64,000 bases of DNA from positions 1 to 64,000 of the IMG/VR virus record IMGVR_UViG_3300023174_000042; one strand, written 5' to 3'. A model generated the notes under the pieces. It worked only from the letters and a program-made list of their open reading frames with translations. It searched no databases and was not told the origin of the DNA. Below are positions 7,706-46,702 of this stretch, piece after piece. Position 1 is the first letter of the stretch. Each line of letters opens with the position of its first letter. The translations under genes and the position numbers were made by a program.

Positions 7706-8224
7706 TTACAACTCCACAACTATTTCACCACTTTTACATGAATTTTCTTTTAAATTTTCTTTTTTAGTTCTTGGTCTAACACCAAAATATAAAAAATTAC
7801 CGTCTTCAGAAAATGCTGAACTTATAATTTTTAATTCATTTTCATCTTTTTGTAAAACAAACTCAACAAAATCAAAATATTCTTCATCTTGATTGTCATT
7901 TCTTTCTTTTGTAAAAATAATTCTTTTATTACATGGATTGTGGGTTTTGAAACTTTCTATAATCTTTTGTATTTTATTTTCAATTATAGGAATTAATATT
8001 TTATCTGGAACACCTACTCTGTAATTTTCATCTGAAAGATTTTTTTCAAAAAACAAATCATAATTTTCATCATAAGAATTATCACCGTGTCTATCAAACC
8101 ATTGATGATACGTTGATATTATTTTATACATTATATTATTATAAATTTTATTTCCTTTTTGTTTTGGGAATTTTTTTGTTTCAAACAAATATTGTCTAAT
8201 AACTCTTTCTATTAATGTATCCAT
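7706..8224 (-). CDS. hypothetical late-class protein
   Basis: TATTTATA 4 nt before ATG; leader ends in YLFE. Confidence 0.7.
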   Translation of the reverse strand: MDTLIERVIRQYLFETKKFPKQKGNKIYNNIMYKIISTYHQWFDRHGDNSYDENYDLFFEKNLSDENYRVGVPDKILIPIIENKIQKIIESFKTHNPCNKRIIFTKERNDNQDEEYFDFVEFVLQKDENELKIISSAFSEDGNFLYFGVRPRTKKENLKENSCKSGEIVVEL

Positions 8225-8237
8225 ATGTTATAAATAT

Positions 8238-8260
8238 AAAACCCCACATTAAAAGTGGGG
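8238..8260 (-). terminator. intrinsic terminator
   Basis: CCCCAC-N7-GTGGGG stem plus U tract on the minus strand, downstream of 8267..8995. Confidence 0.7.
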
Positions 8261-8266
8261 ATTCAA

Positions 8267-8995
8267 TTATAAAATTTCAAGTAAGAAGTTGGAGTTACCT
8301 TCCCAATTTTTAAGTTGAGATTTTGGAACCCAGAAGATCATTTCTCCTATTTCTTCAACTCTTTTTAAATAGTCCTTTCGAAAACGATCCGCTTGACTCT
8401 TATCTTTAATGTATTCAACACCCATGTGTTTAGCACATGTTTTACCCATTGTGGTCAACATTGAAAACTCGTCGGTTAAACTTTTAGCACAACATACACA
8501 AACTTTAGCTCTTTTTACGGTCATTTTACCTGAGAACTTTACTGCTTTAGGCGAAATTGCCAAAACCTTAGTAATGTCCAAGATAGTTGGGTTGAACTCC
8601 AAACCATAAGTTTCTTTCATTTGTTGACCAATACGACGACCAACTTGGATGGTGTCTCCTTCAGTGGGGACATTCATTTGTTTGGTGGCCGCTTTTGTTT
8701 CTTCTTTTTTTATTTGATTGATTGCTGCTAACACTTGTTTGTCGGACAATTTACCATAGGTTTCAAGTTTAGATTGAATCTCTTTTACAAAAGAGTTTTC
8801 TCCTGCGTAAGATTGAATTTTTTTCATGTCGTCTGTTAACTCAACTTGTTTTGCTTCAACAGGAGCGTTTAAGATTTTTTCAATAGCAGCTTCTTGTTTA
8901 GAAGTTAAGGAACCGTATTTTTTTATTACATCTTTCATTTTTAAAACAAAAGAGTTAGATCCTTGATAATTTTGAACTTGAGTGATGGTAGACAT
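8267..8995 (-). CDS. early protein with duplicated N-terminal module and DUF6011-like Zn finger
   Basis: NYQGSNSFV..MK..I.KYGSLTSKQ repeated as SYAGENSFV.EIQ..L.TYGKLSDKQ; CVCCAKSLTD...MGKTCA. Confidence 0.6.
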   Translation of the reverse strand: MSTITQVQNYQGSNSFVLKMKDVIKKYGSLTSKQEAAIEKILNAPVEAKQVELTDDMKKIQSYAGENSFVKEIQSKLETYGKLSDKQVLAAINQIKKEETKAATKQMNVPTEGDTIQVGRRIGQQMKETYGLEFNPTILDITKVLAISPKAVKFSGKMTVKRAKVCVCCAKSLTDEFSMLTTMGKTCAKHMGVEYIKDKSQADRFRKDYLKRVEEIGEMIFWVPKSQLKNWEGNSNFLLEIL

Positions 8996-9020
8996 ATAAA
9001 GTGTTTAATTGATTACAATA

Positions 9021-9051
9021 CAAAGATAGTAATATTTTTGTTTCAACCAAA
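9021..9051 (-). promoter_or_regulatory. Bacteroidota sigma70-type promoter (-33 TTTG / -7 TATCTTTG)
   Basis: TTTGG-N18-TATCTTTG, same spacing as the copies at 31833-31863 and 48893-48923. Confidence 0.75.
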
Positions 9052-17897: not shown

Positions 17898-18305
17898 TTA
17901 TTTTTTAATTTTTACAGTATCAACAGGAATTAAGGTTACTTTTGTAACACCTCTTTTAATAAAATTAAGTTTTTTAGCCGTTCCATAACTAAGATCAATA
18001 ATAAATTTTGAACTTTTTGGTAGTCTGTCATTAACTTTAACATAACATACTGAGTCGTTGTTTTGATTTACAACTTTTAGAATTGTTCCAAACTTAAAGT
18101 GTTTATGAGCGGCCGTTAAACTATCGGCATGAAATCTTTCACCTGAAGCAGTTAATCTTCCTGTCCAATGTTGTCCGTAATAAGATGCGGTTCCTTCGTA
18201 ATTATTTGGTGTTGATATAAAAGAAACAAAAAATAATGAAGTAATTAAGATAAGTTTATTTAAAATTCCAATTTTTGTATTTAGTTTCGATTTTTCTTTT
18301 TCCAT
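17898..18305 (-). CDS. rlpA: RlpA-like lytic transglycosylase (DPBB fold)
   Basis: GTASYYG...TASGERF...LTAAHK...KVNDR...IIDLSY. Confidence 0.85.
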   Translation of the reverse strand: MEKEKSKLNTKIGILNKLILITSLFFVSFISTPNNYEGTASYYGQHWTGRLTASGERFHADSLTAAHKHFKFGTILKVVNQNNDSVCYVKVNDRLPKSSKFIIDLSYGTAKKLNFIKRGVTKVTLIPVDTVKIKK

Positions 18306-19506
18306 ATTTTTTTTCCATAATTTGTTGGTGAAGATCCCAATTCTGTATTGATTCTGTCATTTCTTTATCATCTTCAGCCATATCATATAACTTGACAATT
18401 TTTTTAATCATTTTATTTGCAACATAATTAAATTTTTCAAATTCATCTTCAAAAAATTTAGTTGGGTTTTTTTGGTATTTAGTAGTTTGGTTTAAAAATT
18501 TTTGTCTAACTTCATTGGTTTTACCCAACTTTTCAACTTCCCCTTGTAATTCATTTGGTAATAACCCAATTTGAGCACCAAATTTTAACATATCATCCAT
18601 TCCGTGTTCAGTCATTCTAAAAAACATTTCCAGTCTGTTATTTACTAAATCAATATAAACAATTTCTAAAACTTTGTCAATTTTTTCTTTAATTGTCATA
18701 TCAGAAGGGTCTTCACCAATATGTTCTATAAGTTTGTCCATTCTTTCTTCTTGTTCTTTTAGATTTGAAATAAAATCTTCAAAAGTAAAATTTCTTATTT
18801 CTAATAATTCTTTATAAACTCTGTTATTTTCAATAAAGTCCTTGAATTGTGATTTAGTTATTTTTTTTCTTTTCAAAGAATATGCAACTTCAGTTGGTCT
18901 AACCAAATTTTCAATTCCATGAATAAAATACATATACCTGTAAAAGACGTTATCAATAACAGGTATTGCAAAAGTTCCTCTTTGTTGTGTTGCTTGATAT
19001 TTGGCGTCAGGTCCAACTTTACTAAATATATTAACTTGTTTATCGTATTTATGTTTTAATTCATGAGCCAAAGATGCTACTTGTTCGTCTCGTTCTTCTT
19101 CTAATTTTTCATATAATTGATGAGGTTCCCAATTTTCACCAACAGCAAAAGTTATTGTTAAATCTAAAGTGCCTGATGGTTCTATTTCTTTTAAAAATTT
19201 ATCTCGATTAAACGCAAATCTTCCACCCATAGCCATCGACGTTATATCTAAAACACCTTCTTCATTAGAAATTTCTTCTGTAACAATTTTTAAAGTATAA
19301 GAATTTAAAAAAACTTTTTTATTGTCTCCTATTACAAAAATAAATCTACCATCAAAATTATACTCGTCTTCTTTTGTTTTAATTGATTTTAATTTTTTTA
19401 AAACAAGGTCATATAATTTATCAGCAGCATTTAAGATGTTATCTGGAACTCCTAAAGCTTCAGTAATTAGTTTTAATTGATTTTTGGTGATGATAATATT
19501 TCCCAT
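18256..19506 (-). CDS. late-class protein with HExxH putative zinc-metallopeptidase motif
   Basis: LAHELKHKYD; leader MGNIIITKNQLKLITE; TATTTATT 3 nt before ATG. Confidence 0.55.
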   Translation of the reverse strand: MGNIIITKNQLKLITEALGVPDNILNAADKLYDLVLKKLKSIKTKEDEYNFDGRFIFVIGDNKKVFLNSYTLKIVTEEISNEEGVLDITSMAMGGRFAFNRDKFLKEIEPSGTLDLTITFAVGENWEPHQLYEKLEEERDEQVASLAHELKHKYDKQVNIFSKVGPDAKYQATQQRGTFAIPVIDNVFYRYMYFIHGIENLVRPTEVAYSLKRKKITKSQFKDFIENNRVYKELLEIRNFTFEDFISNLKEQEERMDKLIEHIGEDPSDMTIKEKIDKVLEIVYIDLVNNRLEMFFRMTEHGMDDMLKFGAQIGLLPNELQGEVEKLGKTNEVRQKFLNQTTKYQKNPTKFFEDEFEKFNYVANKMIKKIVKLYDMAEDDKEMTESIQNWDLHQQIMEKKYGKRKIETKYKNWNFK

Positions 19507-19783: not shown

Positions 19784-19993
19784 TTAGAATCTGTAAGATG
19801 TGTATTTTTCGATTGCCTTTTTTGTGTTTTCTCCAGCAATACCATCTTCAGTTAATCCAGCATTGAAACAAGAATTTAATTTTTTTTGAACTTGCATAAC
19901 TTGATCTGAAGTTTGTTCATTTAAAATTGAACTTTCGATTAAATTATTTTTTAATCTTTTATATTGGTCTTCGGTTAGTTTAATTTTACTCAT
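19784..19993 (-). CDS. small leader-bearing protein with peptidoglycan-binding-like motif
   Basis: VMQVQKKLN...LTEDGIAGENTKKAI matches the L..DGI.G..T..AI pattern. Confidence 0.6.
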   Translation of the reverse strand: MSKIKLTEDQYKRLKNNLIESSILNEQTSDQVMQVQKKLNSCFNAGLTEDGIAGENTKKAIEKYTSYRF

Positions 19994-20007: not shown

Positions 20008-20832
20008 TTAAGCGATGAATGTTTGATATGCATCTTTAGTTATTGCTGGGCCAACTTCGGGTGTTGGTGCTCCTGTTGAAGTTCCTGCTGGTGTTGTTGT
20101 TTGTTGAGATGAACCAACAGTCTTACACTTAGATTCAATTTCTTTCATAATTGTATTAAAATCAAAGGTATATCTTGTTGATTTACTACCACCTTTTTTA
20201 GAAGTAGTTGTTTTTTTTACTTGATTTACTTGATTTACTTGATTTACTTGTTGTGTTTTTGGTGTTTTTGCCGCGACTTTTGCCAACTCTCTTGATTTTC
20301 TAACAGCAGTAAGTAATGGTTGATACACAAATTCGTTCCATTGTTCATCATCATCAAAATTTAGGTCTAAAAAATCAAACAATTTTCTACCTGGATGATT
20401 TTCAGCAAATCTTGTTGAAAGGGCACATAAATCAGGTATAGTTGGAATTGATTTAAGGGCTTTCTTAATTGCTTCTTCATTTGTGTTATATCCACCAACA
20501 CCTCCAGCATCCCATATTATTTTTACAAGTTTATCCAATACGTTTCCATTTAAAGTTTGTGGACCAACACCTTGAGCTTTACAAGCTTGGAAAATTTTTT
20601 TAACACCTTCGCTTGAACCATATGATTGACCCAATAATCCTAAAGAAGCTCCTATCACCGCTCCTGGAATACCATATAACTTGAATCCTAAAGCAGCACT
20701 TCCTACAACACCTGATGAAATTTGTTCGTTTAGATTGTTGTTATTTTTTTTCTCGTTTAAGAAAAATTCTTTATTATGAAGAGACAAAATTCTTTTTGAT
20801 TCTTCTTCTGTTAGTATAAAATTGTTTCTCAT
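20008..20832 (-). CDS. leader-bearing protein with glycine-zipper segment and annexin-like repeat
   Basis: GIPGAVIGASLGLLG; GGYNTNEEAIKKAL...DLCAL...GRKLFDFL. Confidence 0.5.
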   Translation of the reverse strand: MRNNFILTEEESKRILSLHNKEFFLNEKKNNNNLNEQISSGVVGSAALGFKLYGIPGAVIGASLGLLGQSYGSSEGVKKIFQACKAQGVGPQTLNGNVLDKLVKIIWDAGGVGGYNTNEEAIKKALKSIPTIPDLCALSTRFAENHPGRKLFDFLDLNFDDDEQWNEFVYQPLLTAVRKSRELAKVAAKTPKTQQVNQVNQVNQVKKTTTSKKGGSKSTRYTFDFNTIMKEIESKCKTVGSSQQTTTPAGTSTGAPTPEVGPAITKDAYQTFIA

Positions 20833-27437: not shown

Positions 27438-28337
27438 ATGAACTCCCTTCACGAAGATATAAGAAGAATAAAAAAATTAATGAATCTACTTGAGGGCGAA
27501 CAACTCTATTTAGATTTAGATTTTGGCGAAAAGGACCAAAACAAAATTACAATTAATAGTCCTGAATTTAGTAAAGCGTTTAAAGAAAAAGTTTTTTTTA
27601 TATTAAAGGATATATACGGAAATACAAATTGGTCAAATCAAAAGGGTAAAGGAACAAGAGGTCGTGGTGGATTTGTAAATTTATACACTGTCTATGATTT
27701 AATGAAACAAAAAGGACTTGATGACTATGAAAAAGAAGGTGGTGATTGGTCAATAATAAATTATTTTGACACAAATCCACAAGTAAGAAAATATTTAGTA
27801 AATCTATGGAGAGCTGAGACTTCTAATGAATTGAAAAATGAAGAAAGTATTAAAGATTTTATTTTATGGATGTCAAGAAATAGAAATAAAATTTTCAAAG
27901 AAGGTCCTATACTTAAAAATTTGGTAGATTTGAATGCAACCTCTCTTTATAACGGAGAGCTAAATGAAAGAAAGGCTCACGAATATTTGTCAAAAGTTTT
28001 AAAAGAACTTCCTGATTGGGAACTTTTGAAAAGGTCTTTACCAGGTTCTACAAATGACAGAAAAGGTATTGACATCAAAATGAAAAATAAAAAAACAAAT
28101 AATGAGGCCGATTTTCAAGTAAAACCTTTATCAAACTTTGAAAAAACAAAAGATGGTTATTTGATTACTTCATATAATATAGTTGGTTTGAATGAAAAAC
28201 CTGTAGATTATTTTATATTTGCTTCTCACAATGTTGATGACGTATATATATTTAAAAATATAATAGGAAATTATGAAATTTTAAGCGATACAAAAGTTTT
28301 ATTTAAGGATAAACCTATAGAGTTTAAGTATTTATAA
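27438..28337 (+). CDS. leader-bearing protein with putative PD-(D/E)XK nuclease domain
   Basis: GELNE...DRKGID...FQVKP; TATTTATA at 27415-27422. Confidence 0.5.
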   Translation: MNSLHEDIRRIKKLMNLLEGEQLYLDLDFGEKDQNKITINSPEFSKAFKEKVFFILKDIYGNTNWSNQKGKGTRGRGGFVNLYTVYDLMKQKGLDDYEKEGGDWSIINYFDTNPQVRKYLVNLWRAETSNELKNEESIKDFILWMSRNRNKIFKEGPILKNLVDLNATSLYNGELNERKAHEYLSKVLKELPDWELLKRSLPGSTNDRKGIDIKMKNKKTNNEADFQVKPLSNFEKTKDGYLITSYNIVGLNEKPVDYFIFASHNVDDVYIFKNIIGNYEILSDTKVLFKDKPIEFKYL

Positions 28338-32245: not shown

Positions 32246-33487
32246 TTAAATATCCAAATCACTCAAATCAACATCACCATAGTCCTCATCTTCGTCATCA
32301 TCATAACCCATCGCTTCTTTATAATCTTGTTCTTTAAGTTCTTTTACAATATCATCAACCATTTCTTGAATAAATCTTTCTCCTTGTGGATCACCTTTAA
32401 GAATCATTTTGGCAACTCTCATAAATTCTTCAGCATCAAGGGCGGAAAATCTCATGAAAAGATAATGTTGGATATGTTTTTTATCTTCATCAAATAACTC
32501 AAGTGGATATGTTGCTAAAAACTTTTCCCAAAATATCGGACCAAGTCTTGAATCCCAAATTTCAGCAGGAAGTGTGTCTTCAGCTTTCAATATCATTTCT
32601 TGTTGTCTTGGATCATCAGGAAGACCGTGTGTTCCAAATATTTCATAAACACCTTTAACAAGTTCATGAACAAGTAATGGAAATGTTACTGCTCTTGCCT
32701 TTACTGTTGGTGGATCAGTTTCTTCATCAACTTCTGATTGTCCCATTTGACCACCACCACCTCCGGCCATTCCTTCCATGTCAGGAAACAACCAATAAGC
32801 GTGTTCCATAAGAGACTGAGTTACAGCGTATAGATTCATTAATTGTGGATTGATATCATTAATTTCATCTCTTACAAGATTATACATATGACCACCTTTA
32901 AATGCCGCTCCTTGAATTAAGGAATTAATGAATCTTCTTTTTTCTCTTTCTAAATTAAAGTTTTCCATGTCTCCCATTAGTTCTTCCACTTCTTCTTCAC
33001 TTGGCATTTCAGATTCGCTTTGCATTCCTTCCGCTGCGCTCATGGGTTGCATAACAAGTTTTGCGTCAAATTGCATTGCTCCTTCAGGAATACCTAATTC
33101 GTTTTTGACCAATTCTACTGCTAAGTTTTCAAGTTCTTCTTTATTTTGAGATTGAATCATAATTACTCTTTGAAGTGCTTGTCCAACGGACATCATAAGT
33201 TGCATTAGAGCGTTTGGTCCTTGGATAGTTCTTGTATCTCCCATTGCCATTCTAACTTTTTCAACCGAATCCTTGAATCTTTTAGAAGATATTAACTCGA
33301 TAAAATCTTGGTCCATTTCTGGCATTGCAGGAAATTTATGATATGGTGTTTGTTTTCCTGTGATTTTTCTTTCGATATCCCCTGCCATTCTTTCAGGTCC
33401 TTCGTAGTCGATTGGGGCTTCCATAAGTCTTAGTAACTCTTTTTTGGTAATACCTTCGGTATATAATCTTTTTTTAATATTTTTCAT
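32246..33487 (-). CDS. late-class hypothetical protein with acidic tail
   Basis: 413 aa; leader ends LRLME; VHELVKG. Confidence 0.75.
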   Translation of the reverse strand: MKNIKKRLYTEGITKKELLRLMEAPIDYEGPERMAGDIERKITGKQTPYHKFPAMPEMDQDFIELISSKRFKDSVEKVRMAMGDTRTIQGPNALMQLMMSVGQALQRVIMIQSQNKEELENLAVELVKNELGIPEGAMQFDAKLVMQPMSAAEGMQSESEMPSEEEVEELMGDMENFNLEREKRRFINSLIQGAAFKGGHMYNLVRDEINDINPQLMNLYAVTQSLMEHAYWLFPDMEGMAGGGGGQMGQSEVDEETDPPTVKARAVTFPLLVHELVKGVYEIFGTHGLPDDPRQQEMILKAEDTLPAEIWDSRLGPIFWEKFLATYPLELFDEDKKHIQHYLFMRFSALDAEEFMRVAKMILKGDPQGERFIQEMVDDIVKELKEQDYKEAMGYDDDEDEDYGDVDLSDLDI

Positions 33488-33488
33488 T

Positions 33489-33845
33489 TTATCTTATATT
33501 AATTCCAAGTTTATCAAAAGTTAACCAATCTGGCATTTCTTCTTTTCTTGCCTTGGGGTTTTTCTTTGGTCCTGGTTTTGGTCTATATGGAGTTCCGGGT
33601 TTATTTGGTTTTGTTGGTGTTTTAATTCCCGGTCTAACAGGTGTTTCAATTTCTCTGTTTTCAAAAGTTTCATCTTTAAGATAATTTAAATCCTCTTCTT
33701 CTTCATTCCACTCTTCATCCATTTCAATTTCTTCAAAATCCACATCTTCAGATTCAAATTGTTCTTGTTCAGAAATTACACGACCTCTATTGTAATTAAA
33801 AAGATATTTAATATCCTTTAATTCCTCGTTTAATTTATTTTTCAT
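33489..33845 (-). CDS. leader-bearing protein with acidic and Pro/Lys-rich segments (start reassigned to MKNKLNE)
   Basis: TATTTATT at 33861-33868; leader ends VISE. Confidence 0.7.
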   Translation of the reverse strand: MKNKLNEELKDIKYLFNYNRGRVISEQEQFESEDVDFEEIEMDEEWNEEEEDLNYLKDETFENREIETPVRPGIKTPTKPNKPGTPYRPKPGPKKNPKARKEEMPDWLTFDKLGINIR

Positions 33846-34440: not shown

Positions 34441-35028
34441 TTAAATTTCTTTTAGATCAAGATCCACATCAATTGGTATTCCGTATTTTTCTAACTTTTT
34501 GTAAAAAAAGTCATAAACCTCACTTCTTAAATAAGCAAGAAGATCTCCAGTCTCATAATTACCCTGAGCCTCTAAATAAGCAGCTTCAATCGTATCATTT
34601 ACTTCTATTTCTCTATCAGTTCCTTCTTCATACATGTTGAAGTTCATTGTTCCTTGATCGTCAACATACACAAAAATATCAACTCCAAAATCTTCTCCTA
34701 ATCTACCAAACTGATTTACTTCAATAACCTTAATTCTTGTATCAAGATTACCCCAACTACTTTTCAGATCATATATTTTATCATCAATTTCATTTTTTAA
34801 TTTTTTAAATAGGTTATTAAAACCACCGTTGTATTCATACCAAATGGGTCTAATAAGTTGGAAGTCTTCGTTTGTATTTTTTCTAATGTCTGTAATGTCA
34901 TATATCACATCATCAAGATGTGGTTCTTCACCCATCTTTTTTTGTTTATTCCATACCGTATAGCAAAGTTTTCGAAGGTTATCTTCGGTTAATCTATTAT
35001 ATTGTTTTTCTGTAATTATTATTTTCAT
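34441..35028 (-). CDS. MKIIITE-leader cassette protein 5
   Basis: ATG 35028 overlaps upstream stop (TAATG); MKIIITEKQYNRLTE. Confidence 0.8.
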   Translation of the reverse strand: MKIIITEKQYNRLTEDNLRKLCYTVWNKQKKMGEEPHLDDVIYDITDIRKNTNEDFQLIRPIWYEYNGGFNNLFKKLKNEIDDKIYDLKSSWGNLDTRIKVIEVNQFGRLGEDFGVDIFVYVDDQGTMNFNMYEEGTDREIEVNDTIEAAYLEAQGNYETGDLLAYLRSEVYDFFYKKLEKYGIPIDVDLDLKEI

Positions 35029-35378
35029 TACCAATCTGTTCTTGGATTTTCGTTTATAACATTAAGTAATTTGAATTTGAAATTATTTTTCCCTAAATAG
35101 TTTTCCAAATTTAATTTTAAGTCCCACAAATAGTCACCAACATCAAATGTGTCAAAAATTGTATCTATATAAATAATTATTCCTAACTCAACAACATTAT
35201 CAGTCTTGTATGCCGTTACCACATCAATTTTTGTAATCGCTTCGTAATTATCCCCATATCCACCTTCATCATAATAATCTTCTTCTTTTATGTTATCAGC
35301 AATGTCTTTCCAAGCCATATCAACCGCATTTTGAAATGATATAGTTTTTAATTGTGATTCTGTTATTATTATTTTCAT
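35028..35378 (-). CDS. MKIIITE-leader cassette protein 4
   Basis: MKIIITESQL; TATTTATT 4 nt before ATG. Confidence 0.8.
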   Translation of the reverse strand: MKIIITESQLKTISFQNAVDMAWKDIADNIKEEDYYDEGGYGDNYEAITKIDVVTAYKTDNVVELGIIIYIDTIFDTFDVGDYLWDLKLNLENYLGKNNFKFKLLNVINENPRTDW

Positions 35379-35380: not shown

Positions 35381-35932
35381 CTAATAAATAGTAACCAAAG
35401 GAACCGTTACATAATATCCTGTAACAGGTAAAATTATTTCATTCATGCAATCTTGAACAACATCATTAACTTCTTCTTGGATTTCCCAACCTATATCTTC
35501 ATCCTCCAAAGCTTGATCTAAGGTTAGATGTCTTCCATCCTCCATAAGTGTTACGGAACCTCCAGGTAGAGTTTTTCCATATAGAAAAACATCATAATCT
35601 CTATATTCCATATTAGTGATTTCCCACTCAAAATCATAACCACCAACTAATCTTTCACTAAAATCTTTTGTTGAAAATTTCTTGTTTTTTAATGTATTTA
35701 TAAATTTTTTAACAAATGCCTCATCCCCAACTAATTCTTGAAATTCTGTTTGAGCGTGTAACTTATCGGTAAATTCGGTTATACCCCAAAATTCAAGTTC
35801 ATCTCTATCAAATCTAATTTTGTTACCTTTTTCTAACTCTTTTTTCCAATACTTAATAACCGCACCAATACCTTTATTTCGGTAAGATTCTTTAATAAGA
35901 CTATATTGTTTATTAGATATTATTACTTTCAT
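35381..35932 (-). CDS. MKIIITE-leader cassette protein 3
   Basis: MKVIISNKQYSLIKE. Confidence 0.8.
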   Translation of the reverse strand: MKVIISNKQYSLIKESYRNKGIGAVIKYWKKELEKGNKIRFDRDELEFWGITEFTDKLHAQTEFQELVGDEAFVKKFINTLKNKKFSTKDFSERLVGGYDFEWEITNMEYRDYDVFLYGKTLPGGSVTLMEDGRHLTLDQALEDEDIGWEIQEEVNDVVQDCMNEIILPVTGYYVTVPLVTIY

Positions 35933-36255
35933 AATTCCGCTTTGATATATTTTACATCAACATTAAATTTATTTTCAAAAGAGTTTTTAATCATATCTAA
36001 CACTTTTTCTTTTTTGATTGGGAACCAAGATTCTAAGTTGTTTAAATATTTTTTTGATATCCACAATCTACCATCAGATTTATCATATTCAATAAACGGC
36101 TCGTTATCAATGTTCCAAACATTTCTCTTATCCCAAATAACAATATAATAATCAACATAAGAAGGTTCATTTTCATCTAAGGTATCATCTACGAGTGATT
36201 TAATAAAATCATTCAATAGTTTTTTTTTCTGTGATTCTGTAATTATTATTTTCAT
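35929..36255 (-). CDS. MKIIITE-leader cassette protein 2
   Basis: MKIIITESQKKKL. Confidence 0.8.
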   Translation of the reverse strand: MKIIITESQKKKLLNDFIKSLVDDTLDENEPSYVDYYIVIWDKRNVWNIDNEPFIEYDKSDGRLWISKKYLNNLESWFPIKKEKVLDMIKNSFENKFNVDVKYIKAEL

Positions 36256-36257
36256 GA

Positions 36258-36632
36258 CTATACAATATTAGCCCCACTTACCTCTTTTATTTCAATATCA
36301 GGAAAAAGTCCTTTGAAGTAATCATAAACTGCGTTTTTTAAGTGTCTTGACATTATATGAGAAGGTATATAATCTTCCATATCTCTATCTATTGAATAAT
36401 CGTAATATAGTGATTTTGATTCTTTTCTATACACAAATAAAGGTTCCCCGTTTTCGTTCATCAAATATATTGAGTTGTGAACCTCACCCCAACTTTTAAC
36501 ATCTTTAGAAATGGTCTTTAAAAACAACTTCTTATATTTTGGGTATTCATCCTCATACTTAGCATCAAAACGATCTCTTCTATAAGTTTCGTTGATTAAA
36601 TCAAGTTGATGTTGGGTTACAATGATTTTCAT
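36258..36632 (-). CDS. MKIIITE-leader cassette protein 1
   Basis: MKIIVTQHQLDLINE; TATTTATC 4 nt before ATG. Confidence 0.8.
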   Translation of the reverse strand: MKIIVTQHQLDLINETYRRDRFDAKYEDEYPKYKKLFLKTISKDVKSWGEVHNSIYLMNENGEPLFVYRKESKSLYYDYSIDRDMEDYIPSHIMSRHLKNAVYDYFKGLFPDIEIKEVSGANIV

Positions 36633-36654
36633 ATAAGATAAATACTTTATAAAA

Positions 36655-36690: not shown

Positions 36691-36710
36691 TGTTTTTATT
36701 TAATTTAATA

Positions 36711-38093
36711 TTAACTATGTGTAAATAAGTTGAAGTCCTCATCTTCTTCAGCTCTTCTGAAAACAGAATCAGGTAGAACTCTTTTTGGATCAGATCCTCC
36801 TAAGTTTAAAACCATAAGGTTTGGCATATCACCAATACATTCAGGTAGTTTTTGTAAATCAGGATTATTAACTAATGATAGATATTGTAAATTTTGTAAA
36901 CCACAAATTGCTTCAGGTAAAGAAGCCACGCACCCAACAAAGTTAATTGCACTTAGATTTTTGAACCTACCGATGTCATTTGGAATATTAAGTGATAGTT
37001 TATCTTTTGAAGAATTTTTAAAGGTAAATCTTTGTAAAGATTGAGGTAAGGTCGCAAAAAACTCATCGAATCCATAAAGTGCGATAAACTTAGACGCCGA
37101 ATCACCTGGATAATCAATAACCACTTTTTCACCTTTCTCACCTGCTAATGACTTCATAAACTCAGGTTTGAAGAATTGTTTTAGACCTTCTTCGTTTGTA
37201 TTTAAAAATTCAATCAAATTGATTTGTCTATCATCAGCATCCATGAATTGATTATCAGGGAAGTGGAACTGATAACGATTTGCTGGAAGTCCTGAAACTT
37301 CACCAGTTTCTTTTCCATAAGATTTAAAAGATGTTGGTGTGTTTGGAATTACAACATATAAAGGTCCTTTAGCGATATATCTTTCAAACCAACTATATCC
37401 TGGTGATGAGGTGCACCAATTGGTTTCTCCTCTTCTTGCTTCATTATGAGATCCACCGTAGAAACATGCCGCTTCTTTTCCTAATGGCCCTGTGTTTGAT
37501 ATTTTAGCAACCGTCCAATCTTGACCTCTATAAACGATGTCAGCTCCAGGGTGAGCAAATGTCTGAGAAGCCTCTTTTTTCTCAGCGGCAGTTGCTTTAG
37601 TTTTTTCTAAACTGAAATCTTTAACTTGATCATATAAAGTCTCAGGAGTTAGTTTATTTATATCTCTAAACTCTTGAGGTAATCTATTTTTGAATCTTTC
37701 AAACTTTTGAAGGTTTGTCGTAACTTTATATAAGTCTTCCATGAAAAGGTCTTGAAATGACTTTAAAGCCGCCTTATATTGACCTGATTGTGGATCAGAA
37801 ATCATTAATGGGTGATCTGCTGGTAACTTAGGTGTAACAAAGTTTTTTAATAACCACTGAGCGTATTTTCCAATTTTAACCCTCTCCATTTGTTCAGGTT
37901 TAACATTATTAACGTCCATTCCGTCCGGAACTTTTGTTGTCGGATCTGCGGCGATAATTGTAAATAAAGTTTCGAAAGGCATTATACCTCTTTGACCTTT
38001 TTCTTTTGGTTTTACGAACTTATCAAATAATACTTGAAATCTTGAGCTTTCAACAATTAAATCTCTTAAAATGTTTGTAAATCTTAACGACAT
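36711..38093 (-). CDS. late-class protein with TxWCT motif and C-terminal leucine-rich repeats
   Basis: ETNWCTSS, YQFHF; LPQSLQRF, IPNDIGRFKNLSAINF, LPEAICGLQNLQYLSL, LPECIGDMPNLMVLNL. Confidence 0.75.
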   Translation of the reverse strand: MSLRFTNILRDLIVESSRFQVLFDKFVKPKEKGQRGIMPFETLFTIIAADPTTKVPDGMDVNNVKPEQMERVKIGKYAQWLLKNFVTPKLPADHPLMISDPQSGQYKAALKSFQDLFMEDLYKVTTNLQKFERFKNRLPQEFRDINKLTPETLYDQVKDFSLEKTKATAAEKKEASQTFAHPGADIVYRGQDWTVAKISNTGPLGKEAACFYGGSHNEARRGETNWCTSSPGYSWFERYIAKGPLYVVIPNTPTSFKSYGKETGEVSGLPANRYQFHFPDNQFMDADDRQINLIEFLNTNEEGLKQFFKPEFMKSLAGEKGEKVVIDYPGDSASKFIALYGFDEFFATLPQSLQRFTFKNSSKDKLSLNIPNDIGRFKNLSAINFVGCVASLPEAICGLQNLQYLSLVNNPDLQKLPECIGDMPNLMVLNLGGSDPKRVLPDSVFRRAEEDEDFNLFTHS

Positions 38094-42651: not shown

Positions 42652-44316
42652 TTATTGAGTCTTTCTATTATAAGACATTAAACTATTGATTCTATCAAAT
42701 TCTTCATTAAGTTTTTCAACTTTTTTGAAGTCTTCAGACTCATCAACTTTATTTAAAATTGATTGTGCCGTTATTTTTCCTTTTTTTGACTTTAGTGAAC
42801 CTCTTTCAGTATGTTCTCCCGCTTGATCAACAGGTTGTGGTTGTCTTTTATAAGATGCGCTCATTTGTTCTTGGCCGTAAAAATTGTCTTTGTAGTTTTT
42901 AAAGAATTTTTCACCAACTTTACTTGGAACTACATTTCCTAATGCCTTTCCATCGTCATCAACTTGAGCATTTCCTGTTGTTCTGTGACCTTTCAAGTAT
43001 TTTTCAATATTTTCATCGTTAGGCTTAATTTCGTCGTAAACCAAGTTAGTTTGACCAGGATAAGAAAATGCGTCAAGGTATTCATCAACCGCATCAGATG
43101 GTGTATATTTTTTTCTATTACCTTTTTTTAATCCTCCATTTTCAGTTGGAAACTTTTGAGTTTCTTTCATTTCGTATTTAGATCCAGAATCTGAAGCCCC
43201 CTTCAAATAATCAGTCATTTTTTTAGCAACGCTTTTCAAATAATCGTCGTTTTCTTTTTTATCTGCCTTATGTGCTCTTTCGTATTCTCTATAACCTTTT
43301 GGTTCTTTAACTTTAAATTTTGTTTCTTCTTTAACCAATTTTTCTATAAGATCAATCAAGTCTGTTTCAGTAAAAAGAATAGTTTCATTAACTTTGGCTT
43401 TGCCCTTTCCTTTCCAACCTTGTTTTGCTCTTTTTGCGAAATAAAGTTGACTCATTTTTGTTCGATCTGCGTGTGAAACTTTTTTTCCTGATTCTTTGGT
43501 TCTATCGTTTTTATCTTTTTGTTTTTTAATAGCCGCGTTTAATTCTTCAATTGACATGTCAGAATATTCACCTGTATGTTCCACTTCAACATCTCCTTTC
43601 CACTTTTCAGTAACCTCATATTTTTTTCCATCAACTTCAAAAGAATCTTCTCCTCGTTTTTTTGCTTTTGCTAATGCCCCTGTAAATGCGTTACCTTCAT
43701 CAGTTTCTTGTTTTTCAAACTCAATTTCATAAAGTTGTTCCTCTTCGTTTTGATGTTTTCTTAACATTTTAAAATCTTCAGAATCTAATCTACCATTTTT
43801 ATTTTTGTCAAGTTTATATTGTTTTCCATATAATTTTTCCTTCATTTCATATGAAGAACCACATTCCATACATTCAGACTCATCGATTTCAAGTTCGTAT
43901 TCAAACTCCTCATCATCATGATCGTCAAATTTTCTTTTTGGACGGTTTTCCATTTTTTTAAATTTATCATCAAAAGAATGTTCGTAATTTCTATCTGAAA
44001 TAAGATCTTCCTTTTCTTTTCGAGACATTTTTGATAAATTTTTATTTCCGAATCTTGGGTGTCCGTCGTCCATACCACCTAACTCCATAACCTCACCACT
44101 ACCTTTCCATCCACACTCCATACATTCGCCTTCATACATTTCTCCACCACATTCACAAGTCTCCCCTTCTTGGACATAATCAAATGCTTCACCACTAGGG
44201 TTAAAAGGGACTTCTTTTTTGTAATTCAATTTATTTAAAATTGATTCACTTTTTTCTTTTATATTTTCTTGTAAAATTTTTTTAAATCTTGATACGATAT
44301 ATTGTTCTTTGTTCAT
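42652..44316 (-). CDS. large charged late protein, possibly prohead core/scaffold-like
   Basis: TATTTATT at 44332-44339; many xxE sites; CECGG/CMECG; EF-hand-like LDKNKNGRLDSEDF; EGNAFTGAL. Confidence 0.55.
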   Translation of the reverse strand: MNKEQYIVSRFKKILQENIKEKSESILNKLNYKKEVPFNPSGEAFDYVQEGETCECGGEMYEGECMECGWKGSGEVMELGGMDDGHPRFGNKNLSKMSRKEKEDLISDRNYEHSFDDKFKKMENRPKRKFDDHDDEEFEYELEIDESECMECGSSYEMKEKLYGKQYKLDKNKNGRLDSEDFKMLRKHQNEEEQLYEIEFEKQETDEGNAFTGALAKAKKRGEDSFEVDGKKYEVTEKWKGDVEVEHTGEYSDMSIEELNAAIKKQKDKNDRTKESGKKVSHADRTKMSQLYFAKRAKQGWKGKGKAKVNETILFTETDLIDLIEKLVKEETKFKVKEPKGYREYERAHKADKKENDDYLKSVAKKMTDYLKGASDSGSKYEMKETQKFPTENGGLKKGNRKKYTPSDAVDEYLDAFSYPGQTNLVYDEIKPNDENIEKYLKGHRTTGNAQVDDDGKALGNVVPSKVGEKFFKNYKDNFYGQEQMSASYKRQPQPVDQAGEHTERGSLKSKKGKITAQSILNKVDESEDFKKVEKLNEEFDRINSLMSYNRKTQ

Positions 44317-44342
44317 TTTAAGTTGTTTTATAATAAATATCT

Positions 44343-45095
44343 TTATCTTTGCGTTTTTACTATTTCTTCAAAAACAAGATCAGAAATATATTCTTTGTTT
44401 ATTTTATATTTAACAGAAACATTTTCTATCGCTTTTTGGACTTGTTCACTTTCAAAAATTTTCAAAGCGTTTATATCTCCCTGATTACAGTAGGGAAACT
44501 TTTTACACTTCTTTTTAACTTGAACTCTTTTGGATCCAGGCATGAACTTTGTTGTCGCACCCTTCCAATCTTTTTTACTGAGCGATTTTGCCCAAATTGC
44601 TGGTTGTGAATATTGTCCTGAAGATGCTGATGTTGTTGCTTCTTTTGTTTCAGCCTTTTTAAGTTCTGAGTCTTCAATATCTAAACTTTCCCTAACAGTT
44701 TTTATACCTTTTGTAATGTCTCCTTTTGTTGTAGAGAATAATGGCATAGAATATCCACCCGCAGATGCCGCTCCTGTTGATTCAGTATTTTCTTCTTTTT
44801 TGTTAGGTTTCTCGTCTAAAATTGATTGTAAAAATTTTTTTACATCTTCGGGGTTTTTTAAATAATTTTTTATTTTTGACTTTATTTGATTGTTTGAAAG
44901 TTTCTTGTTTGTTATTAATCGGTAAATCTCTATAATGTCGTTTTTATCTTTTAAGAAGTTTAAATATTTTTTTATTCTTTCTTCTTTAACTTCGGCTTTT
45001 TCGATACTTTTAATCACATTTCTTCTTAGCTCAGGTTCGCCAGCCAAAGCACTTGTCATGGCCGATTTTAATTTTTCTGTTACATTTGAGTCCAT
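44343..45095 (-). CDS. hypothetical protein, possibly head-associated
   Basis: ESTGAASAGGY and EATTSASSGQY repeats; CKKFPYC. Confidence 0.6.
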   Translation of the reverse strand: MDSNVTEKLKSAMTSALAGEPELRRNVIKSIEKAEVKEERIKKYLNFLKDKNDIIEIYRLITNKKLSNNQIKSKIKNYLKNPEDVKKFLQSILDEKPNKKEENTESTGAASAGGYSMPLFSTTKGDITKGIKTVRESLDIEDSELKKAETKEATTSASSGQYSQPAIWAKSLSKKDWKGATTKFMPGSKRVQVKKKCKKFPYCNQGDINALKIFESEQVQKAIENVSVKYKINKEYISDLVFEEIVKTQR

Positions 45096-45340
45096 TATAA
45101 ACTTTTAAATTTTTGTTCCCAAAATCCTCTCTGTTGATACATAACAGTAAAGTATTCTTGAAAAGATTTTATGACTATATCTTTTACGTCTTTTTTTAAT
45201 TCACCTTTTTGTAAATCTTGAGAAATTTTATCCAATAATTTTTTTTCAAATTGTTTAGATGTGTTTGAGTCAAAAAAATCTTTAATTTCTTTTCTGATCA
45301 ATACTTCAATTTCTTTTTTTTCTGTTGATGAAAGTGCCAT
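45095..45340 (-). CDS. hypothetical protein
   Basis: ORF track. Confidence 0.7.
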   Translation of the reverse strand: MALSSTEKKEIEVLIRKEIKDFFDSNTSKQFEKKLLDKISQDLQKGELKKDVKDIVIKSFQEYFTVMYQQRGFWEQKFKSL

Positions 45341-45768
45341 TATTTAAAAACCGCAATGTAAGTTAATGGAGCAATTATTACTGCCGAAATTATATTAAAT
45401 AAAACACCTTTGGTTTTAATTCTTTTGTTTTCCTTTTTTAAATCAAGATTTTCTTTTTCATAAATCTTAATTTTTTCATTTTTTTCTGAAATAATAATTC
45501 TGTTCAAGGAATCTTCTGACATCCATGATTTATTTTCTTTTTGAAGAAATAAGATTTTATTGTTTAACTCTAGTATTTCTTTTTTATCTAATTGGGACAA
45601 TTCTTTTAACTTATCGTAATCGTTAAGATCTATAAGTATTTTTTGGACCACGGAATATGGTATACACATTTTTGATGTGTCAGAATTTGAACTATTGTTT
45701 TTTTGGGAAAATACATTTAACCCAAATAAAATTATTACCAAAGTTGTAAATATTTTTTTCATGTTCAA
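45340..45768 (-). CDS. periplasmic coiled-coil protein with signal peptide and C-terminal TM (spanin-like candidate)
   Basis: MNMKKIFTTLVIILFGLNVFS/Q; C-terminal VLFNIISAVIIAPLTYIAVF. Confidence 0.5.
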   Translation of the reverse strand: MNMKKIFTTLVIILFGLNVFSQKNNSSNSDTSKMCIPYSVVQKILIDLNDYDKLKELSQLDKKEILELNNKILFLQKENKSWMSEDSLNRIIISEKNEKIKIYEKENLDLKKENKRIKTKGVLFNIISAVIIAPLTYIAVFK

Positions 45769-46118
45769 AAGTTATATTTTTTTCTTAATAAACTATCAAT
45801 TTTTTTCTTGTCAGCAGTTTTAATCTCTTCTTCTTTTATTGTATAATAATTATTAACCTGATTTTTTTCTACTTTTATGTTTGAAATTTTGGTGTCGATG
45901 TCTTTTATTTTTAATTTATATGATATTATTGAATCTTTAAGGTCACTTTGAAGTTTTTTTATTTCTTCGGTTTTTTTATCAATTTGTTCTAGTTTATATT
46001 TATTCAATTCACTATGATTGGGTATTGGTGTAAAAACACGAATTAATAAATACACAAAAATCACCCCTAAAATTGTAAGAGTGATTGTTTTCCAATTATG
46101 TGTTAAAAATTCTTTCAT
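45765..46118 (-). CDS. N-terminal TM coiled-coil protein (i-spanin-like candidate)
   Basis: Single N-terminal TM then coiled coil; near the amidase. Confidence 0.5.
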   Translation of the reverse strand: MKEFLTHNWKTITLTILGVIFVYLLIRVFTPIPNHSELNKYKLEQIDKKTEEIKKLQSDLKDSIISYKLKIKDIDTKISNIKVEKNQVNNYYTIKEEEIKTADKKKIDSLLRKKYNF

Positions 46119-46702
46119 ACGTCTTCTTGTCTTGATGATACTATTTTACCCCATTTTGATTTAAATTTTTCGTAATAGGATTGTATTTTACCAATCATTT
46201 CTAAATATTGTTGATCTATTTTAACCATCTGTCCATTAACATAGATGCCATTAGGTTCATTAATTGTGTAAAAAAACTCCAAATTTAATTCTAAAATTTT
46301 TCCACTCCATTCAACATTGTCAGGAAAAACATTTAATTTGCCAAAATCAACCAACTCTGCAACTTGATTTCTAAACTCATCAACACTTTCAACAAAAGCA
46401 GTTTTTTCGTCTGTTGTTAATTGGGTATCGGCCTTTGTTTTCCCGTGTAATACGATGATGTTTCCTTGTATTCTAAACGCCTTTTGTTTGTCTCTTGGTG
46501 TTCCAATATCGTCAGAGTCTTTTGATTCTGAACTTTTTTCGGGGTCTTTTTTTGTATCGATGGTTAAATCAACCTCTTCTTCTTGTTCTAAAATTAGACC
46601 ATATTGTTTTCTGATTTCACTTTTGGAACTTTCGTTGATGTTGGCATTAAGAACTTTTCTTGATGCTTCAATCAATTTTTTTATTTCATCGTAATTATTC
46701 AT
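46115..46702 (-). CDS. leader-bearing hypothetical protein
   Basis: NINE, LILEQE sites. Confidence 0.7.
   Translation of the reverse strand: MNNYDEIKKLIEASRKVLNANINESSKSEIRKQYGLILEQEEEVDLTIDTKKDPEKSSESKDSDDIGTPRDKQKAFRIQGNIIVLHGKTKADTQLTTDEKTAFVESVDEFRNQVAELVDFGKLNVFPDNVEWSGKILELNLEFFYTINEPNGIYVNGQMVKIDQQYLEMIGKIQSYYEKFKSKWGKIVSSRQEDV

What the first reader, a model, noticed from the sequence alone, without database searches (positions are those of the whole stretch)
7706..46702. Window-wide family of late proteins with an N-terminal (I/L/hydrophobic)-X-E propeptide
Seen: many unrelated ORFs, most with a TATTTAT motif upstream, begin with a short basic/amphipathic leader ending in hydrophobic-X-E: YLFE (7706), LITE (18256), LIE/ILNE (19784), FLNE/LNE (20008), FLLE (25893), NLLE (27438), RLME (32246), VISE (33489), RLTE (34441), LIKE (35381), LINE (36258), LIVE (36711), ILQE (42652), NINE/LILE (46115). 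Known: T4 internal proteins carry a short N-terminal capsid-targeting sequence removed by the gp21 protease after (I/L)-X-E. Inference: a large head-packaged, protease-matured cargo set injected with the DNA, with diverse payloads (HExxH, nuclease-like, annexin-like, LRR, PG-binding).
Basis: partly seen in the sequence, partly recalled or inferred. Interest (0 to 1): 0.7.

Follow-up and report, generated by a model that had tools for sequence, protein, structure and literature searches.

The report
Shared cleavable leader on phage cargo proteins
A 272-kb T4-like jumbo phage of Bacteroidota puts the same short N-terminal leader, ending in the T4 head-protease cut motif (I/L)-x-E, on at least 50 otherwise unrelated late proteins, which most likely marks them for packaging into the capsid and cleavage there, although packaging itself is not shown.

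Summary
The literal criterion (hydrophobic-x-E near the N-terminus) is not discriminating: 65% of all 318 ORFs meet it.

A real signal lies behind it. An all-vs-all comparison of the first 40 residues links 50 proteins into one network, against pairs only for internal, C-terminal or shuffled segments. Conservation stops at (I/L)-x-E.

- Five are plausible but unlinked.
- Two more window ORFs were missed.

The genome is a T4-like jumbo phage with a gp23-type capsid protein, a gp20-type portal and an S77/gp21-type prohead protease that keeps the catalytic His/Ser/Asp. Its capsid protein carries LINE|A in the column of T4's FLTE|A maturation site.

A TATTTAT motif precedes head and tail genes and 32 of 50 leader genes.

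One leader, MKRIIRLTESDLARIVRRVINE, is nearly invariant on thousands of unrelated metagenomic proteins: 8,701 clusters.

Best reading: an expanded analogue of the T4 capsid-targeting sequence. This is inferred; packaging and cleavage are untested. Payload functions are mostly unknown. I rate it a new variant of a known kind.

The parts
18256..19506 (-). Leader protein, tier 1 (416 aa). Leader MGNIIITKNQLKLITE|ALG is encoded at 19459-19506.
   Evidence: It is in the 50-member N-terminal network. TATTTAT lies 11 nt upstream. It has 1176 homologues, in which E16, A17 and an HE..H motif are invariant. The AF2 model puts the leader in a low-confidence helix (residues 8-18) set apart from the body.
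19784..19993 (-). Leader protein, tier 1 (69 aa). Leader MSKIKLTEDQYKRLKNNLIE|SS is encoded at 19934-19993.
   Evidence: Network member. Profile A2 hit at E 8.4e-9. The payload scores borderline for PG_binding_1, 22.9 bits against a cut-off of 23.
20008..20832 (-). Leader protein, tier 1 (274 aa). Leader MRNNFILTEEESKRILSLHNKEFFLNE|KK is encoded at 20752-20832.
   Evidence: Network member. TATTTAT lies 24 nt upstream, preceded by a terminator-like hairpin at 20898-20867.
25893..27095 (-). Leader protein, tier 1 (400 aa). Short leader MKNFIKNFLLE|QDD is encoded at 27063-27095.
   Evidence: Network member. TATTTAT lies 12 nt upstream. The G001 orthologue begins MSIKNIIKNMVLE|QSE.
27438..28337 (+). 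Leader protein, tier 1 (299 aa). Leader MNSLHEDIRRIKKLMNLLE|GE is encoded at 27438-27494.
   Evidence: Network member. TATTTAT lies 23 nt upstream. A terminator-like hairpin lies at 27380-27400.
33489..33845 (-). Leader protein, tier 1 (118 aa, from the ATG at 33845). Leader MKNKLNEELKDIKYLFNYNRGRVISE|QE is encoded at 33768-33845.
Evidence: Network member. The G001 orthologue keeps ...RGRVISE|QK.
34441..35028 (-). Leader protein, tier 1 (195 aa, from the ATG at 35028). Leader MKIIITEKQYNRLTE|DN is encoded at 34984-35028.
   Evidence: Network member. Profile A2 hit at E 2.8e-9. The G001 orthologue begins MKIIITESQYQNLTE|KK.
35028..35378 (-). It begins MKIIITESQLKTISF and has only the first I-T-E motif (residue 7).
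   Evidence: Network member. Profile A2 hit at E 1e-8. TATTTAT lies 12 nt upstream.
35381..35932 (-). Leader protein, tier 1 (183 aa). Leader MKVIISNKQYSLIKE|SY is encoded at 35888-35932.
   Evidence: Network member. Profile A2 hit at E 4e-7.
35929..36255 (-). It begins MKIIITESQKKKLLND, with Asp where other members have the second Glu.
   Evidence: Network member. Profile A2 hit at E 7.7e-8.
36258..36632 (-). Leader protein, tier 1 (124 aa). Leader MKIIVTQHQLDLINE|TY is encoded at 36588-36632.
   Evidence: Network member. Profile A2 hit at E 5.5e-8. TATTTAT lies 12 nt upstream, after a G/C hairpin.
7706..8224 (-). Tier 2 candidate (172 aa). It begins MDTLIERVIRQYLFE|TKK.
   Evidence: Not linked in the network. 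The N-terminus is a short leader of the LIRHILKE type. TATTTAT lies 12 nt upstream. The G001 orthologue begins MKRLIERIFREYLLE|EKK.
32246..33487 (-). Tier 2 candidate (413 aa). The leader runs ...KKELLRLME|APIDYEG.
   Evidence: Not linked in the network. The G001 orthologue is 79% identical in the payload. It has a shorter, different N-terminus that still ends RLNE|APIDYEGPERM.
36711..38093 (-). Tier 2 candidate (460 aa). It begins MSLRFTNILRDLIVE|SS. The C-terminus is weakly LRR-like.
   Evidence: Not linked in the network. TATTTAT lies 21 nt upstream. LRR families score below their cut-offs. The orthologue is conserved straight through the putative site, so there is no boundary signal.
42652..44316 (-). 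Tier 2 candidate (554 aa). It begins MNKEQYIVSRFKKILQE|N.
   Evidence: Not linked in the network. TATTTAT lies 23 nt upstream. The G001 payload homologue begins MNREIMKIVNRVVSE|EF.
46115..46702 (-). Tier 2 candidate, the weakest (195 aa). It begins MNNYDEIKKLIE|AS...NINE|SS.
   Evidence: Not linked in the network, and no TATTTAT upstream. It sits in an apparent lysis cassette next to an Amidase_2 gene at 46695-47288, so a lysis role is at least as likely.

Best explanation
The window is the first 64 kb of a 272.6-kb T4-like jumbo phage of a Bacteroidota host.

At least 50 of its ~318 genes (16% of genes, 13% of coding capacity) encode proteins that begin with a modular amphipathic leader of 10-27 residues. 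Eleven of them, plus up to five more, lie in the window.

The leader comes in several related forms:
- MKIIITE(D/K)QY..L.E
- MKRI(I/V)RLTESDL.RIV.RVI.E
- M.(E/N)LIR.ILKE
- ..EI.RIK.LMGLL.E

All forms end in (I/L)-x-E.

I infer that this leader works like the T4 capsid-targeting sequence. The proposed sequence of events is:
1. The proteins are made late in infection.
2. The leader docks them on the very acidic scaffolding core of the prohead.
3. The gp21-family (S77) prohead protease cuts after the Glu and frees the payload inside the head.
4. The payloads leave with the DNA at the next infection.

Shown here:
- The leader family exists, is strictly N-terminal and is modular.
- Selection acts on the peptide.
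- The protease, the capsid-protein site and the shared upstream motif are present.

Inferred:
- Binding to the scaffold.
- Cleavage.
- Encapsidation.
- Ejection.
- Any payload function.
For: 1. The family is real.
- A 50-protein network forms from N-terminal similarity alone; the controls give only pairs.
- Hits are strictly N-terminal.

2. The boundary falls at the T4 cleavage motif.
- Conserved columns end at I/L-x-E.
- In 108 distinct metagenomic payloads, identity is 91% over residues 1-22 and 7% afterwards.
- There, E22 is 100% conserved, I20 is 97%, and the 'x' position is the most variable.
- T4 gp21 cuts after L/I-X-E (PMC9026906).

3. The enzyme is present.
- Peptidase_S77 scores 81 bits against a cut-off of 27.
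- The His, Ser and Asp columns of T4 gp21 are kept.
- It sits beside a gp20-type portal, a gp23-type capsid protein and a 507-aa scaffold-like protein of net charge -73.

4. The capsid protein has FLINE60|A61 in the same alignment column as T4 FLTE65|A66. Mature gp23* is 456 of 521 aa.

5. Expression looks late.
- ATATTTAT lies upstream of 68 genes against 3.8 expected.
- It precedes the scaffold, protease, portal, TerL and tail genes.
- It precedes 32 of 50 leader genes against 78 of 268 others (Fisher p=6.7e-6).

6. Selection acts on the peptide, not the DNA. Synonymous changes outnumber or equal non-synonymous ones in most leader pairs, and all codon families vary across 20 IMG/VR copies.

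7. The leader is interchangeable. Orthologous payloads carry different leader classes in G000 and G001.

8. It co-occurs with the head module. The two near-complete relatives with the leader also have S77 and gp23, with 34 and 12 profile hits. Flavobacterium phage immuto has none and T4 no significant hit (one chance-level match, E 0.016).

9. Scale. 8,701 clusters at 50% identity match the class-b leader at E<=1e-3.

10. Precedent. T-even internal proteins are diverse and share only the CTS (PMC3012670).
Against: - There is no direct evidence of cleavage or encapsidation.
- The leader HMM does not match the T4 CTS read from the T4 genome, so the link is by analogy.
- In 16 collinear orthologue pairs, the leader is no better conserved than the payload: 54% against 57%.
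- Eighteen of 50 members lack Glu in the consensus column. Two window members have only the early I-T-E motif.
- Fifty or more cargo species is far beyond the three T4 internal proteins.
- Payloads are not notably basic, unlike the T4 internal proteins.
- One payload is a T4-type lysozyme, and two have weak peptidoglycan-binding matches. That could point to a lysis or envelope role instead.
- (I/L)-x-E is common by chance in this proteome.
Confidence: 0.6

Rival explanations
1. The leader is a sorting or interaction helix for some destination other than the capsid interior. Examples are the cell envelope or lysis machinery, a phage-made compartment, or a host target. It may not be cleaved at all, and the terminal Glu would then simply be part of the helix.
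For: - Some payloads are envelope-related: Phage_lysozyme at 1e-18, borderline PG_binding_1 and sub-threshold OmpA.
- 46115 lies in a lysis cassette.
- Internal copies of the leader exist in tandem ORFs, as would be expected of a reusable binding module.
- (I/L)-x-E is frequent by chance.
Against: - The leader has charged residues every few positions and no hydrophobic core, so it is not a Sec, Tat or lipoprotein signal. True signal peptides in this genome look quite different.
- The invariant Glu, with a variable residue before it and the exact end of similarity after it, fits a cleavage site better than a helix end.
- The same motif sits at the capsid protein's maturation column.
Confidence: 0.2
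2. The conserved 5' gene end is mainly a DNA-level recombination cassette (terminator, late promoter, first codons). It would shuffle accessory genes in hyperplastic regions, like the PeSL cassettes of T4-type phages. The peptide itself would have little function.
For: - Many leader genes are separate units made of a hairpin, TATTTAT and then the ATG.
- 46 of 50 lie in one accessory arc, 200-272 kb plus 0-40 kb.
- About half have no payload homologue in G001.
- PeSL-mediated shuffling is documented in T4-type phages (PMC2839356 and PMC4122927).
Against: - The amino-acid sequence is held constant while codons vary freely: Arg uses CGT/CGA/AGA/AGG and Leu uses TTA/CTT/TTG. DNA identity is therefore too low to be the selected feature.
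- Internal in-frame copies keep the peptide.
- This mechanism may well help spread the cassette, but it does not explain conservation of the peptide.
Confidence: 0.1
3. The leaders are the remnant of ordinary paralogy: one gene family whose C-terminal parts have diverged beyond recognition. There would be no shared signal function.
For: - Tandem arrays of small genes at 233-238 kb and 246-248 kb look like local duplications.
- One pair is nearly identical at the DNA level in the leader.
Against: - Payload lengths run from 69 to 1018 aa.
- Residues 42-81 give only 7 pairwise links, against 135 for residues 1-40.
- Similarity falls from 91% to the random level within one residue in 108 payloads.
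- Leader classes are swapped on orthologous payloads.
Confidence: 0.05

Closest known systems
T4 capsid-targeting sequence (CTS) of internal proteins IPI/IPII/IPIII, cleaved by the gp21 prohead protease
   Same: - A short N-terminal propeptide ending in (I/L)-x-E.
- Carried on otherwise unrelated proteins.
- The phage has a gp20/gp21/gp22-like/gp23 head module.
- The capsid protein's maturation site has the same motif.
- In the T-even phages, too, only the CTS is conserved among diverse internal proteins.
   Different: - The leader is 10-27 aa with its own consensus, and it has no detectable sequence similarity to MKTYQEFIAE.
- There are at least 50 genes per genome instead of three.
- Payloads are not notably basic.
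- Many leaders carry two nested I/L-x-E motifs.
- Function is untested here.
Proteolytically processed head and ejection proteins of the giant phages phiKZ, 201phi2-1 and SPN3US
   Same: - Jumbo phages whose heads hold tens of different proteins.
- Many of these are cut after Glu by a gp21-related protease and then ejected into the host (PMC9026906, PMC5694885).
   Different: - Those phages use S/A-x-E sites.
- Their propeptides are often more than 100 residues long and have no shared leader sequence.
- Here the head module is directly T4-like, and the tag is a short, shared, transferable leader.
Phage P1 DarB N-terminal capsid-targeting signal
   Same: An N-terminal stretch of about 30 residues is enough to send a protein into the capsid for delivery into the next host (PMC9024508).
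   Different: - In P1 it is known for one protein, not for a genome-wide family.
- There is no sequence relation.
- P1 has no separate T4-type scaffold.
PeSL promoter/stem-loop cassettes of T4-type hyperplastic regions
   Same: - Accessory genes come as self-contained units: hairpin, promoter, gene.
- They sit in plastic genome regions with high turnover between relatives.
   Different: PeSLs are early-promoter DNA elements outside the coding sequence. Here the conserved element is a translated peptide kept by selection on the amino acids.

Membership tests
T4-type CTS propeptide / internal-protein system | The signal lies at the extreme N-terminus of the protein. | tested here: met
   All leader-HMM hits with domain E<0.15 start at residue 1-5. 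Of the motif occurrences among the top metagenomic hits, 117 of 137 are N-terminal.
T4-type CTS propeptide / internal-protein system | The propeptide ends in the gp21 cleavage motif L/I-X-E. | tested here: met
   The last conserved alignment columns are I/L in 38 of 50, x, and E in 32 of 50. In 108 metagenomic payloads I20 is 97% and E22 is 100%. Some members lack the Glu in that column.
T4-type CTS propeptide / internal-protein system | The phage encodes a gp21-family (S77) prohead protease with an intact catalytic triad. | tested here: met
   PF03420 scores 81.1 bits against a cut-off of 27. The His, Ser and Asp columns of T4 gp21 are conserved.
T4-type CTS propeptide / internal-protein system | The same signal is carried on unrelated payloads (modularity). 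| tested here: met
   There are 135 N-terminal links against 7 for residues 42-81. Identity after the Glu is 7%. Leader classes are swapped on orthologous payloads.
T4-type CTS propeptide / internal-protein system | The genes are expressed late, together with the head genes. | tested here: inconclusive
   The upstream motif TATTTAT is shared with the scaffold, protease, portal, TerL and tail genes, and is enriched on leader genes (p=6.7e-6). No expression data were available.
T4-type CTS propeptide / internal-protein system | Sequence homology to the T4 CTS (MKTYQEFIAE). | tested here: not met
   The leader HMM gives no significant score on T4 ipII or ipIII as read from NC_000866. Profile A2 finds nothing significant in the T4 genome.
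T4-type CTS propeptide / internal-protein system | The protein is found inside the capsid with its propeptide removed. | not testable with these tools
   This needs virion proteomics or N-terminomics. No cultured relative carries the leader: tblastn against GenBank phages finds no match, and immuto has 0 hits.
T4-type CTS propeptide / internal-protein system | The signal binds the scaffolding core. | tested here: inconclusive
   The complex prediction of the scaffold with a 113-aa cargo gave no verdict. The only hint is complementary charge: scaffold net -73, against a mean net charge of +1.1 over the first 20 residues of the 50 leaders (+0.36 in other proteins).
Sec/Tat/lipoprotein/T9SS export signals | A hydrophobic core of about 10 or more uncharged residues after a basic N-region (or a C-terminal T9SS domain). 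| tested here: not met
   Leaders have K/R/E/D every 2-4 residues. Genuine signal peptides in the same genome, such as MRNALLYLFLFLSSFFYSQ at 13697-17734, form separate small clusters.

The most novel reading that the evidence does not exclude
A widespread clade of 230-290-kb T4-like phages of Bacteroidota uses one short, transferable leader as a general 'load into the capsid and release by the prohead protease' tag. Each phage carries 40-60 tagged proteins that turn over rapidly, and thousands of tagged protein clusters exist in public metagenomes, some as tandem leader-payload-leader-payload polyproteins. The leader would then be a sequence handle for finding injected phage effectors, such as anti-defence or take-over proteins, directly from metagenomes.
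Probability: 0.45. Interest if true: 0.85.

Novelty: new variant of a known kind. Interest (0 to 1): 0.72.

Why it matters
Proteins injected with phage DNA act before any phage gene is expressed. They include some of the best-known anti-restriction factors, yet they are hard to recognise from sequence.

If this leader is a capsid-loading tag, three things follow.
- It marks at least 50 candidate injected proteins in one genome, and about 8,700 protein clusters in public data, almost all unannotated.
- It shows that the T4 CTS principle has been scaled up by more than ten-fold in uncultured jumbo phages.
- It offers a natural, portable tag for loading foreign proteins into capsids of Bacteroidota phages.

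It also turns an open question, what jumbo-phage accessory genes are for, into a testable one.

Tried and rejected
- **Literal motif.** I tested the literal h-x-E motif as a classifier and rejected it: 65% of all ORFs carry it.
- **Short core HMM.** An HMM of the 13-residue core alone was too weak to give useful E-values.
- **Cultured phages.** tblastn of the 25-aa leader against 50,697 GenBank phage records found no match.
- **Nearest relatives.** The leader profile found nothing in Flavobacterium phage immuto, the nearest cultured relative by capsid protein. In T4 it gave only a chance-level hit. On G000, G001 and G002 the same profile gave 25, 34 and 12 hits.
- **T4 head proteins.** The leader HMM against T4 ipII, ipIII and the T4 head proteins showed no homology.
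- **Complex prediction.** Scaffold-like protein plus a 113-aa cargo gave no verdict. I do not count this for or against binding.
- **Payload function of 18256-19506.**
  - Pfam found nothing.
  - The Atlas look-alikes are only viral hypothetical clusters.
  - The AF2 model (pLDDT 72) has no fold match in PDB or the AFDB clusters.
  - 32246 likewise has only viral hypothetical look-alikes.
- **Extra conservation in orthologues.** I looked for extra leader conservation in orthologue pairs and did not find it.
- **Literature.** Searches for the leader strings found no paper.
- **Sigma-70 promoters.** Sigma-70-type promoter consensus is not enriched in the region: 78 found against 109 expected.

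Full report
**What the window is**

The window is the first 64 kb of a single 272,576-bp virus record, 93% complete by CheckV and about 29% G+C.

The genome carries a T4-type head module on the minus strand at 180-192 kb:
- A gp23-type major capsid protein at 180236-182143 (PF07068, E 2.8e-73).
- A 507-aa scaffold-like protein of net charge -73 at 182170-183693.
- A Peptidase_S77/gp21-type prohead protease at 184046-184774 (81 bits against a cut-off of 27).
- A gp20-type portal at 186739-188547.
- A T4-type large terminase at 189954-191732.

The host is a Bacteroidota. The evidence is Bacteroidota-style signal peptides and a 1345-aa protein with a T9SS C-terminal sorting domain in the window.

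By capsid protein, the nearest cultured relatives are only 41-44% identical: Flavobacterium phage vB_FspM_immuto and Microcystis phage Mel-JY01.

**Checking the observation**

The 14 ORFs and their tetrapeptides are present. The criterion 'hydrophobic-x-E near the N-terminus' does not discriminate in this proteome, which is rich in I, L, K, N and E:
- 207 of 318 predicted proteins have it in the first 30 residues.
- 44-53% of internal windows of the same size have it.

Reading all N-termini together shows something much more specific: families of conserved leaders.

The all-vs-all comparison gives a clear result:

| Segment compared | Links at E<=0.01 | Structure |
|---|---|---|
| Residues 1-40 | 135 | one component of 50 proteins |
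| Residues 42-81 | 7 | pairs only |
| Last 40 residues | 9 | pairs only |
| Shuffled N-termini (3 runs) | 3-7 | pairs, one trio |

So about 16% of the genes share an N-terminus and little else.

- Aligned, the leaders share an amphipathic pattern. Its last conserved columns are I/L (38 of 50), x, E (32 of 50), and conservation then collapses.
- A profile of the leader hits only at residues 1-5 of proteins.
- Two further window ORFs, 35028-35378 and 35929-36255, belong to it but were missed.
- The other five (7706, 32246, 36711, 42652, 46115) are not linked at E<=0.01, but they have leader-like N-termini.

**Evidence that the leader is a functional peptide module**

- **Selection on the peptide.** Synonymous codon differences equal or exceed non-synonymous ones in most pairs of the MKRI(I/V)RLTE.DL.RIV.RVI.E copies. 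Twenty IMG/VR copies of this leader use all synonymous codon families while the peptide stays fixed. Selection is therefore on the amino-acid sequence, not on a DNA or RNA element.
- **A sharp boundary.** A search of 5.8 billion proteins with residues 1-40 of one small member returned 148 proteins. Their first 22 residues are about 91% identical, and they become unrelated (7% identity) immediately after I-N-E. E22 is invariant, I20 is 97% conserved, and the residue between them is the most variable leader position. That is the signature expected of an L/I-X-E site.
- **Scale.** A profile of this leader against 1.84 billion cluster representatives finds 8,701 clusters at E<=1e-3 and 863 at E<=1e-10, nearly all matching from residue 1.
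- **Tandem forms.** Some hits are tandem leader-payload-leader-payload ORFs. This would fit polyprotein-like processing.
- **Interchangeable classes.** In a 292-kb relative, G001, which has at least 40 leader ORFs, orthologous payloads can carry a different leader class. G000 has MKNLIRRIIKEETTKLLNE|SGIR where G001 has MKMVITESQYKRLLNE|SGIR. About half of the G000 leader genes have no payload homologue in G001.

**The link to head maturation**

- T4 gp21 cuts after L/I-X-E, and the 10-residue CTS of the T4 internal proteins targets them to the prohead core. In the T-even phages, only the CTS is conserved among diverse internal proteins (PMC9026906, PMC3012670).
- The protease here keeps the His, Ser and Asp columns of T4 gp21.
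- In an alignment with T4 gp23 read from NC_000866, the capsid protein's FLINE60|A61 falls in the column of T4's FLTE65|A66. The PDB chain lengths of 521 and 456 residues confirm that 65 residues are removed in T4.
- The motif ATATTTAT is found upstream of 68 genes against 3.8 expected. It precedes the scaffold, protease, portal, terminase and tail genes. It precedes 32 of 50 leader genes against 78 of 268 others (p=6.7e-6).
- The two near-complete IMG/VR genomes that carry the leader also carry S77 and gp23.
- The leader profile gives 25, 34 and 12 hits in G000, G001 and G002. It gives none in immuto and no significant hit in T4 (one chance-level match, E 0.016).
- Proteins with recognisable housekeeping or structural domains do not carry the leader. 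These include an SbcC-like protein, methyltransferases, a sigma factor, DnaJ, glutamine synthetase, an AAA ATPase, the capsid protein, the portal and the terminase.
- 46 of the 50 leader genes lie in one accessory arc, 200-272 kb plus 0-40 kb.

**Interpretation**

The best-supported mechanism is an expanded analogue of the T4 CTS system. Late-made proteins would be docked by the leader on the acidic scaffold core, released inside the head by the S77 protease cutting after the Glu, and delivered with the DNA at the next infection.

This is inference, and there are weak points:
- No cleavage or packaging has been measured.
- The leader is not homologous to the T4 CTS.
- In orthologue pairs it is no better conserved than the payload.
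- Some members lack the second Glu.
- The number of putative cargo species is unprecedented for a T4-type head.

Three rivals remain: a non-capsid sorting or interaction helix, a DNA-level shuffling cassette like the PeSLs (PMC2839356, PMC4122927), and plain paralogy. The sharp boundary, the codon evidence and the payload diversity argue against the last two. The first cannot be excluded computationally.

**Payloads**

Almost none has a recognisable domain. The exceptions are:
- A T4-type lysozyme domain on 256758-257675 (E 1e-18).
- A borderline PG_binding_1 on 19784-19993.
- Weak LRR on 36711-38093.
- Sub-threshold OmpA on 228650-229501.

The 416-aa protein at 18256-19506 has 1176 homologues of near-constant length, with an invariant HE..H motif and an invariant E16-A17. 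Its AF2 model finds no fold match.

**Verdict**

I rate it a new variant of a known kind (CTS-type capsid targeting). It is unusual in its scale, in its leader sequence and in its spread through metagenomes. I found no paper describing it in the searchable library.

Noticed in passing
window 13697-17734 (-): A 1345-aa protein with a Bacteroidota-style signal peptide, an Ig-like CHU_C-associated domain and a T9SS C-terminal sorting domain (Por_Secre_tail, E 4.9e-9). This phage-encoded T9SS substrate also points to the host phylum.
   Followed up: partly
window 17898-18305 (-): A small signal-peptide protein with a DPBB_1 (RlpA-like lytic transglycosylase) domain, E 5.6e-16. It overlaps the start of the leader gene 18256-19506.
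   Followed up: no
window 45340-48623 (-): An apparent lysis cassette. ORF 46115 may therefore be lysis-related rather than cargo.
   Followed up: partly
window 48930-49730, 39273-40196, 23856-25079, 38133-38984, 22483-23337: The phage encodes a sigma-70-family factor (regions 1.2, 2 and 4), a full DnaJ, a glutamine-synthetase-like protein and two DNA methyltransferases (D12 Dam-type and N6_N4). The sigma factor is a candidate reader of the TATTTAT motif.
   Followed up: no
window 61941-62159 (+); genome 70316-70540 (-); genome 136663-136965 (-): Three small proteins of 72-100 aa share a different N-terminus (M..QITI.S(I/L)SG..P...Y.CD). Each lies next to large structural-looking genes. This is a second, small N-terminal family found by the same network analysis.
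   Followed up: no
genome 236152-236538 (-) (L010:12152-12538): A 128-aa protein carries a leader-like sequence (ESLIKRIVRETLRERYL) at its C-terminus instead of its N-terminus. It may be a C-terminal targeting peptide or a remnant of a fusion.
   Followed up: no
metagenomic proteins P0241, P0244, P0246, P0247, P0249, P0263 and others: Single ORFs hold two copies of the class-b leader, one at the N-terminus and one internal, each followed by a different payload. They look like polyprotein-style tandem cargo.
   Followed up: partly
genome 182170-183693 (-) (L013:6170-7693): The scaffold-like protein is extreme: net charge -73, with long Met/Asp/Glu repeats (MMEMDD, MEEMDD), then a basic Lys/Gly-rich stretch, then a C-terminal region with many h-x-E sites.
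   Followed up: partly
genome-wide (318 ORFs): The TATTTAT motif starts mostly 10-14 or 20-24 nt before the ATG. Late mRNAs would therefore have very short 5' leaders, as expected for a host that makes little use of Shine-Dalgarno pairing. Sigma-70 consensus promoters are depleted in the scanned window stretch 17500-37400.
   Followed up: partly
G002 (IMG/VR record behind L034), 61598-61651 (+): A leader-profile hit (E 4e-6) lies in a 106-aa ORF directly downstream of the S77 protease gene of this relative, that is, inside its head module.
   Followed up: no
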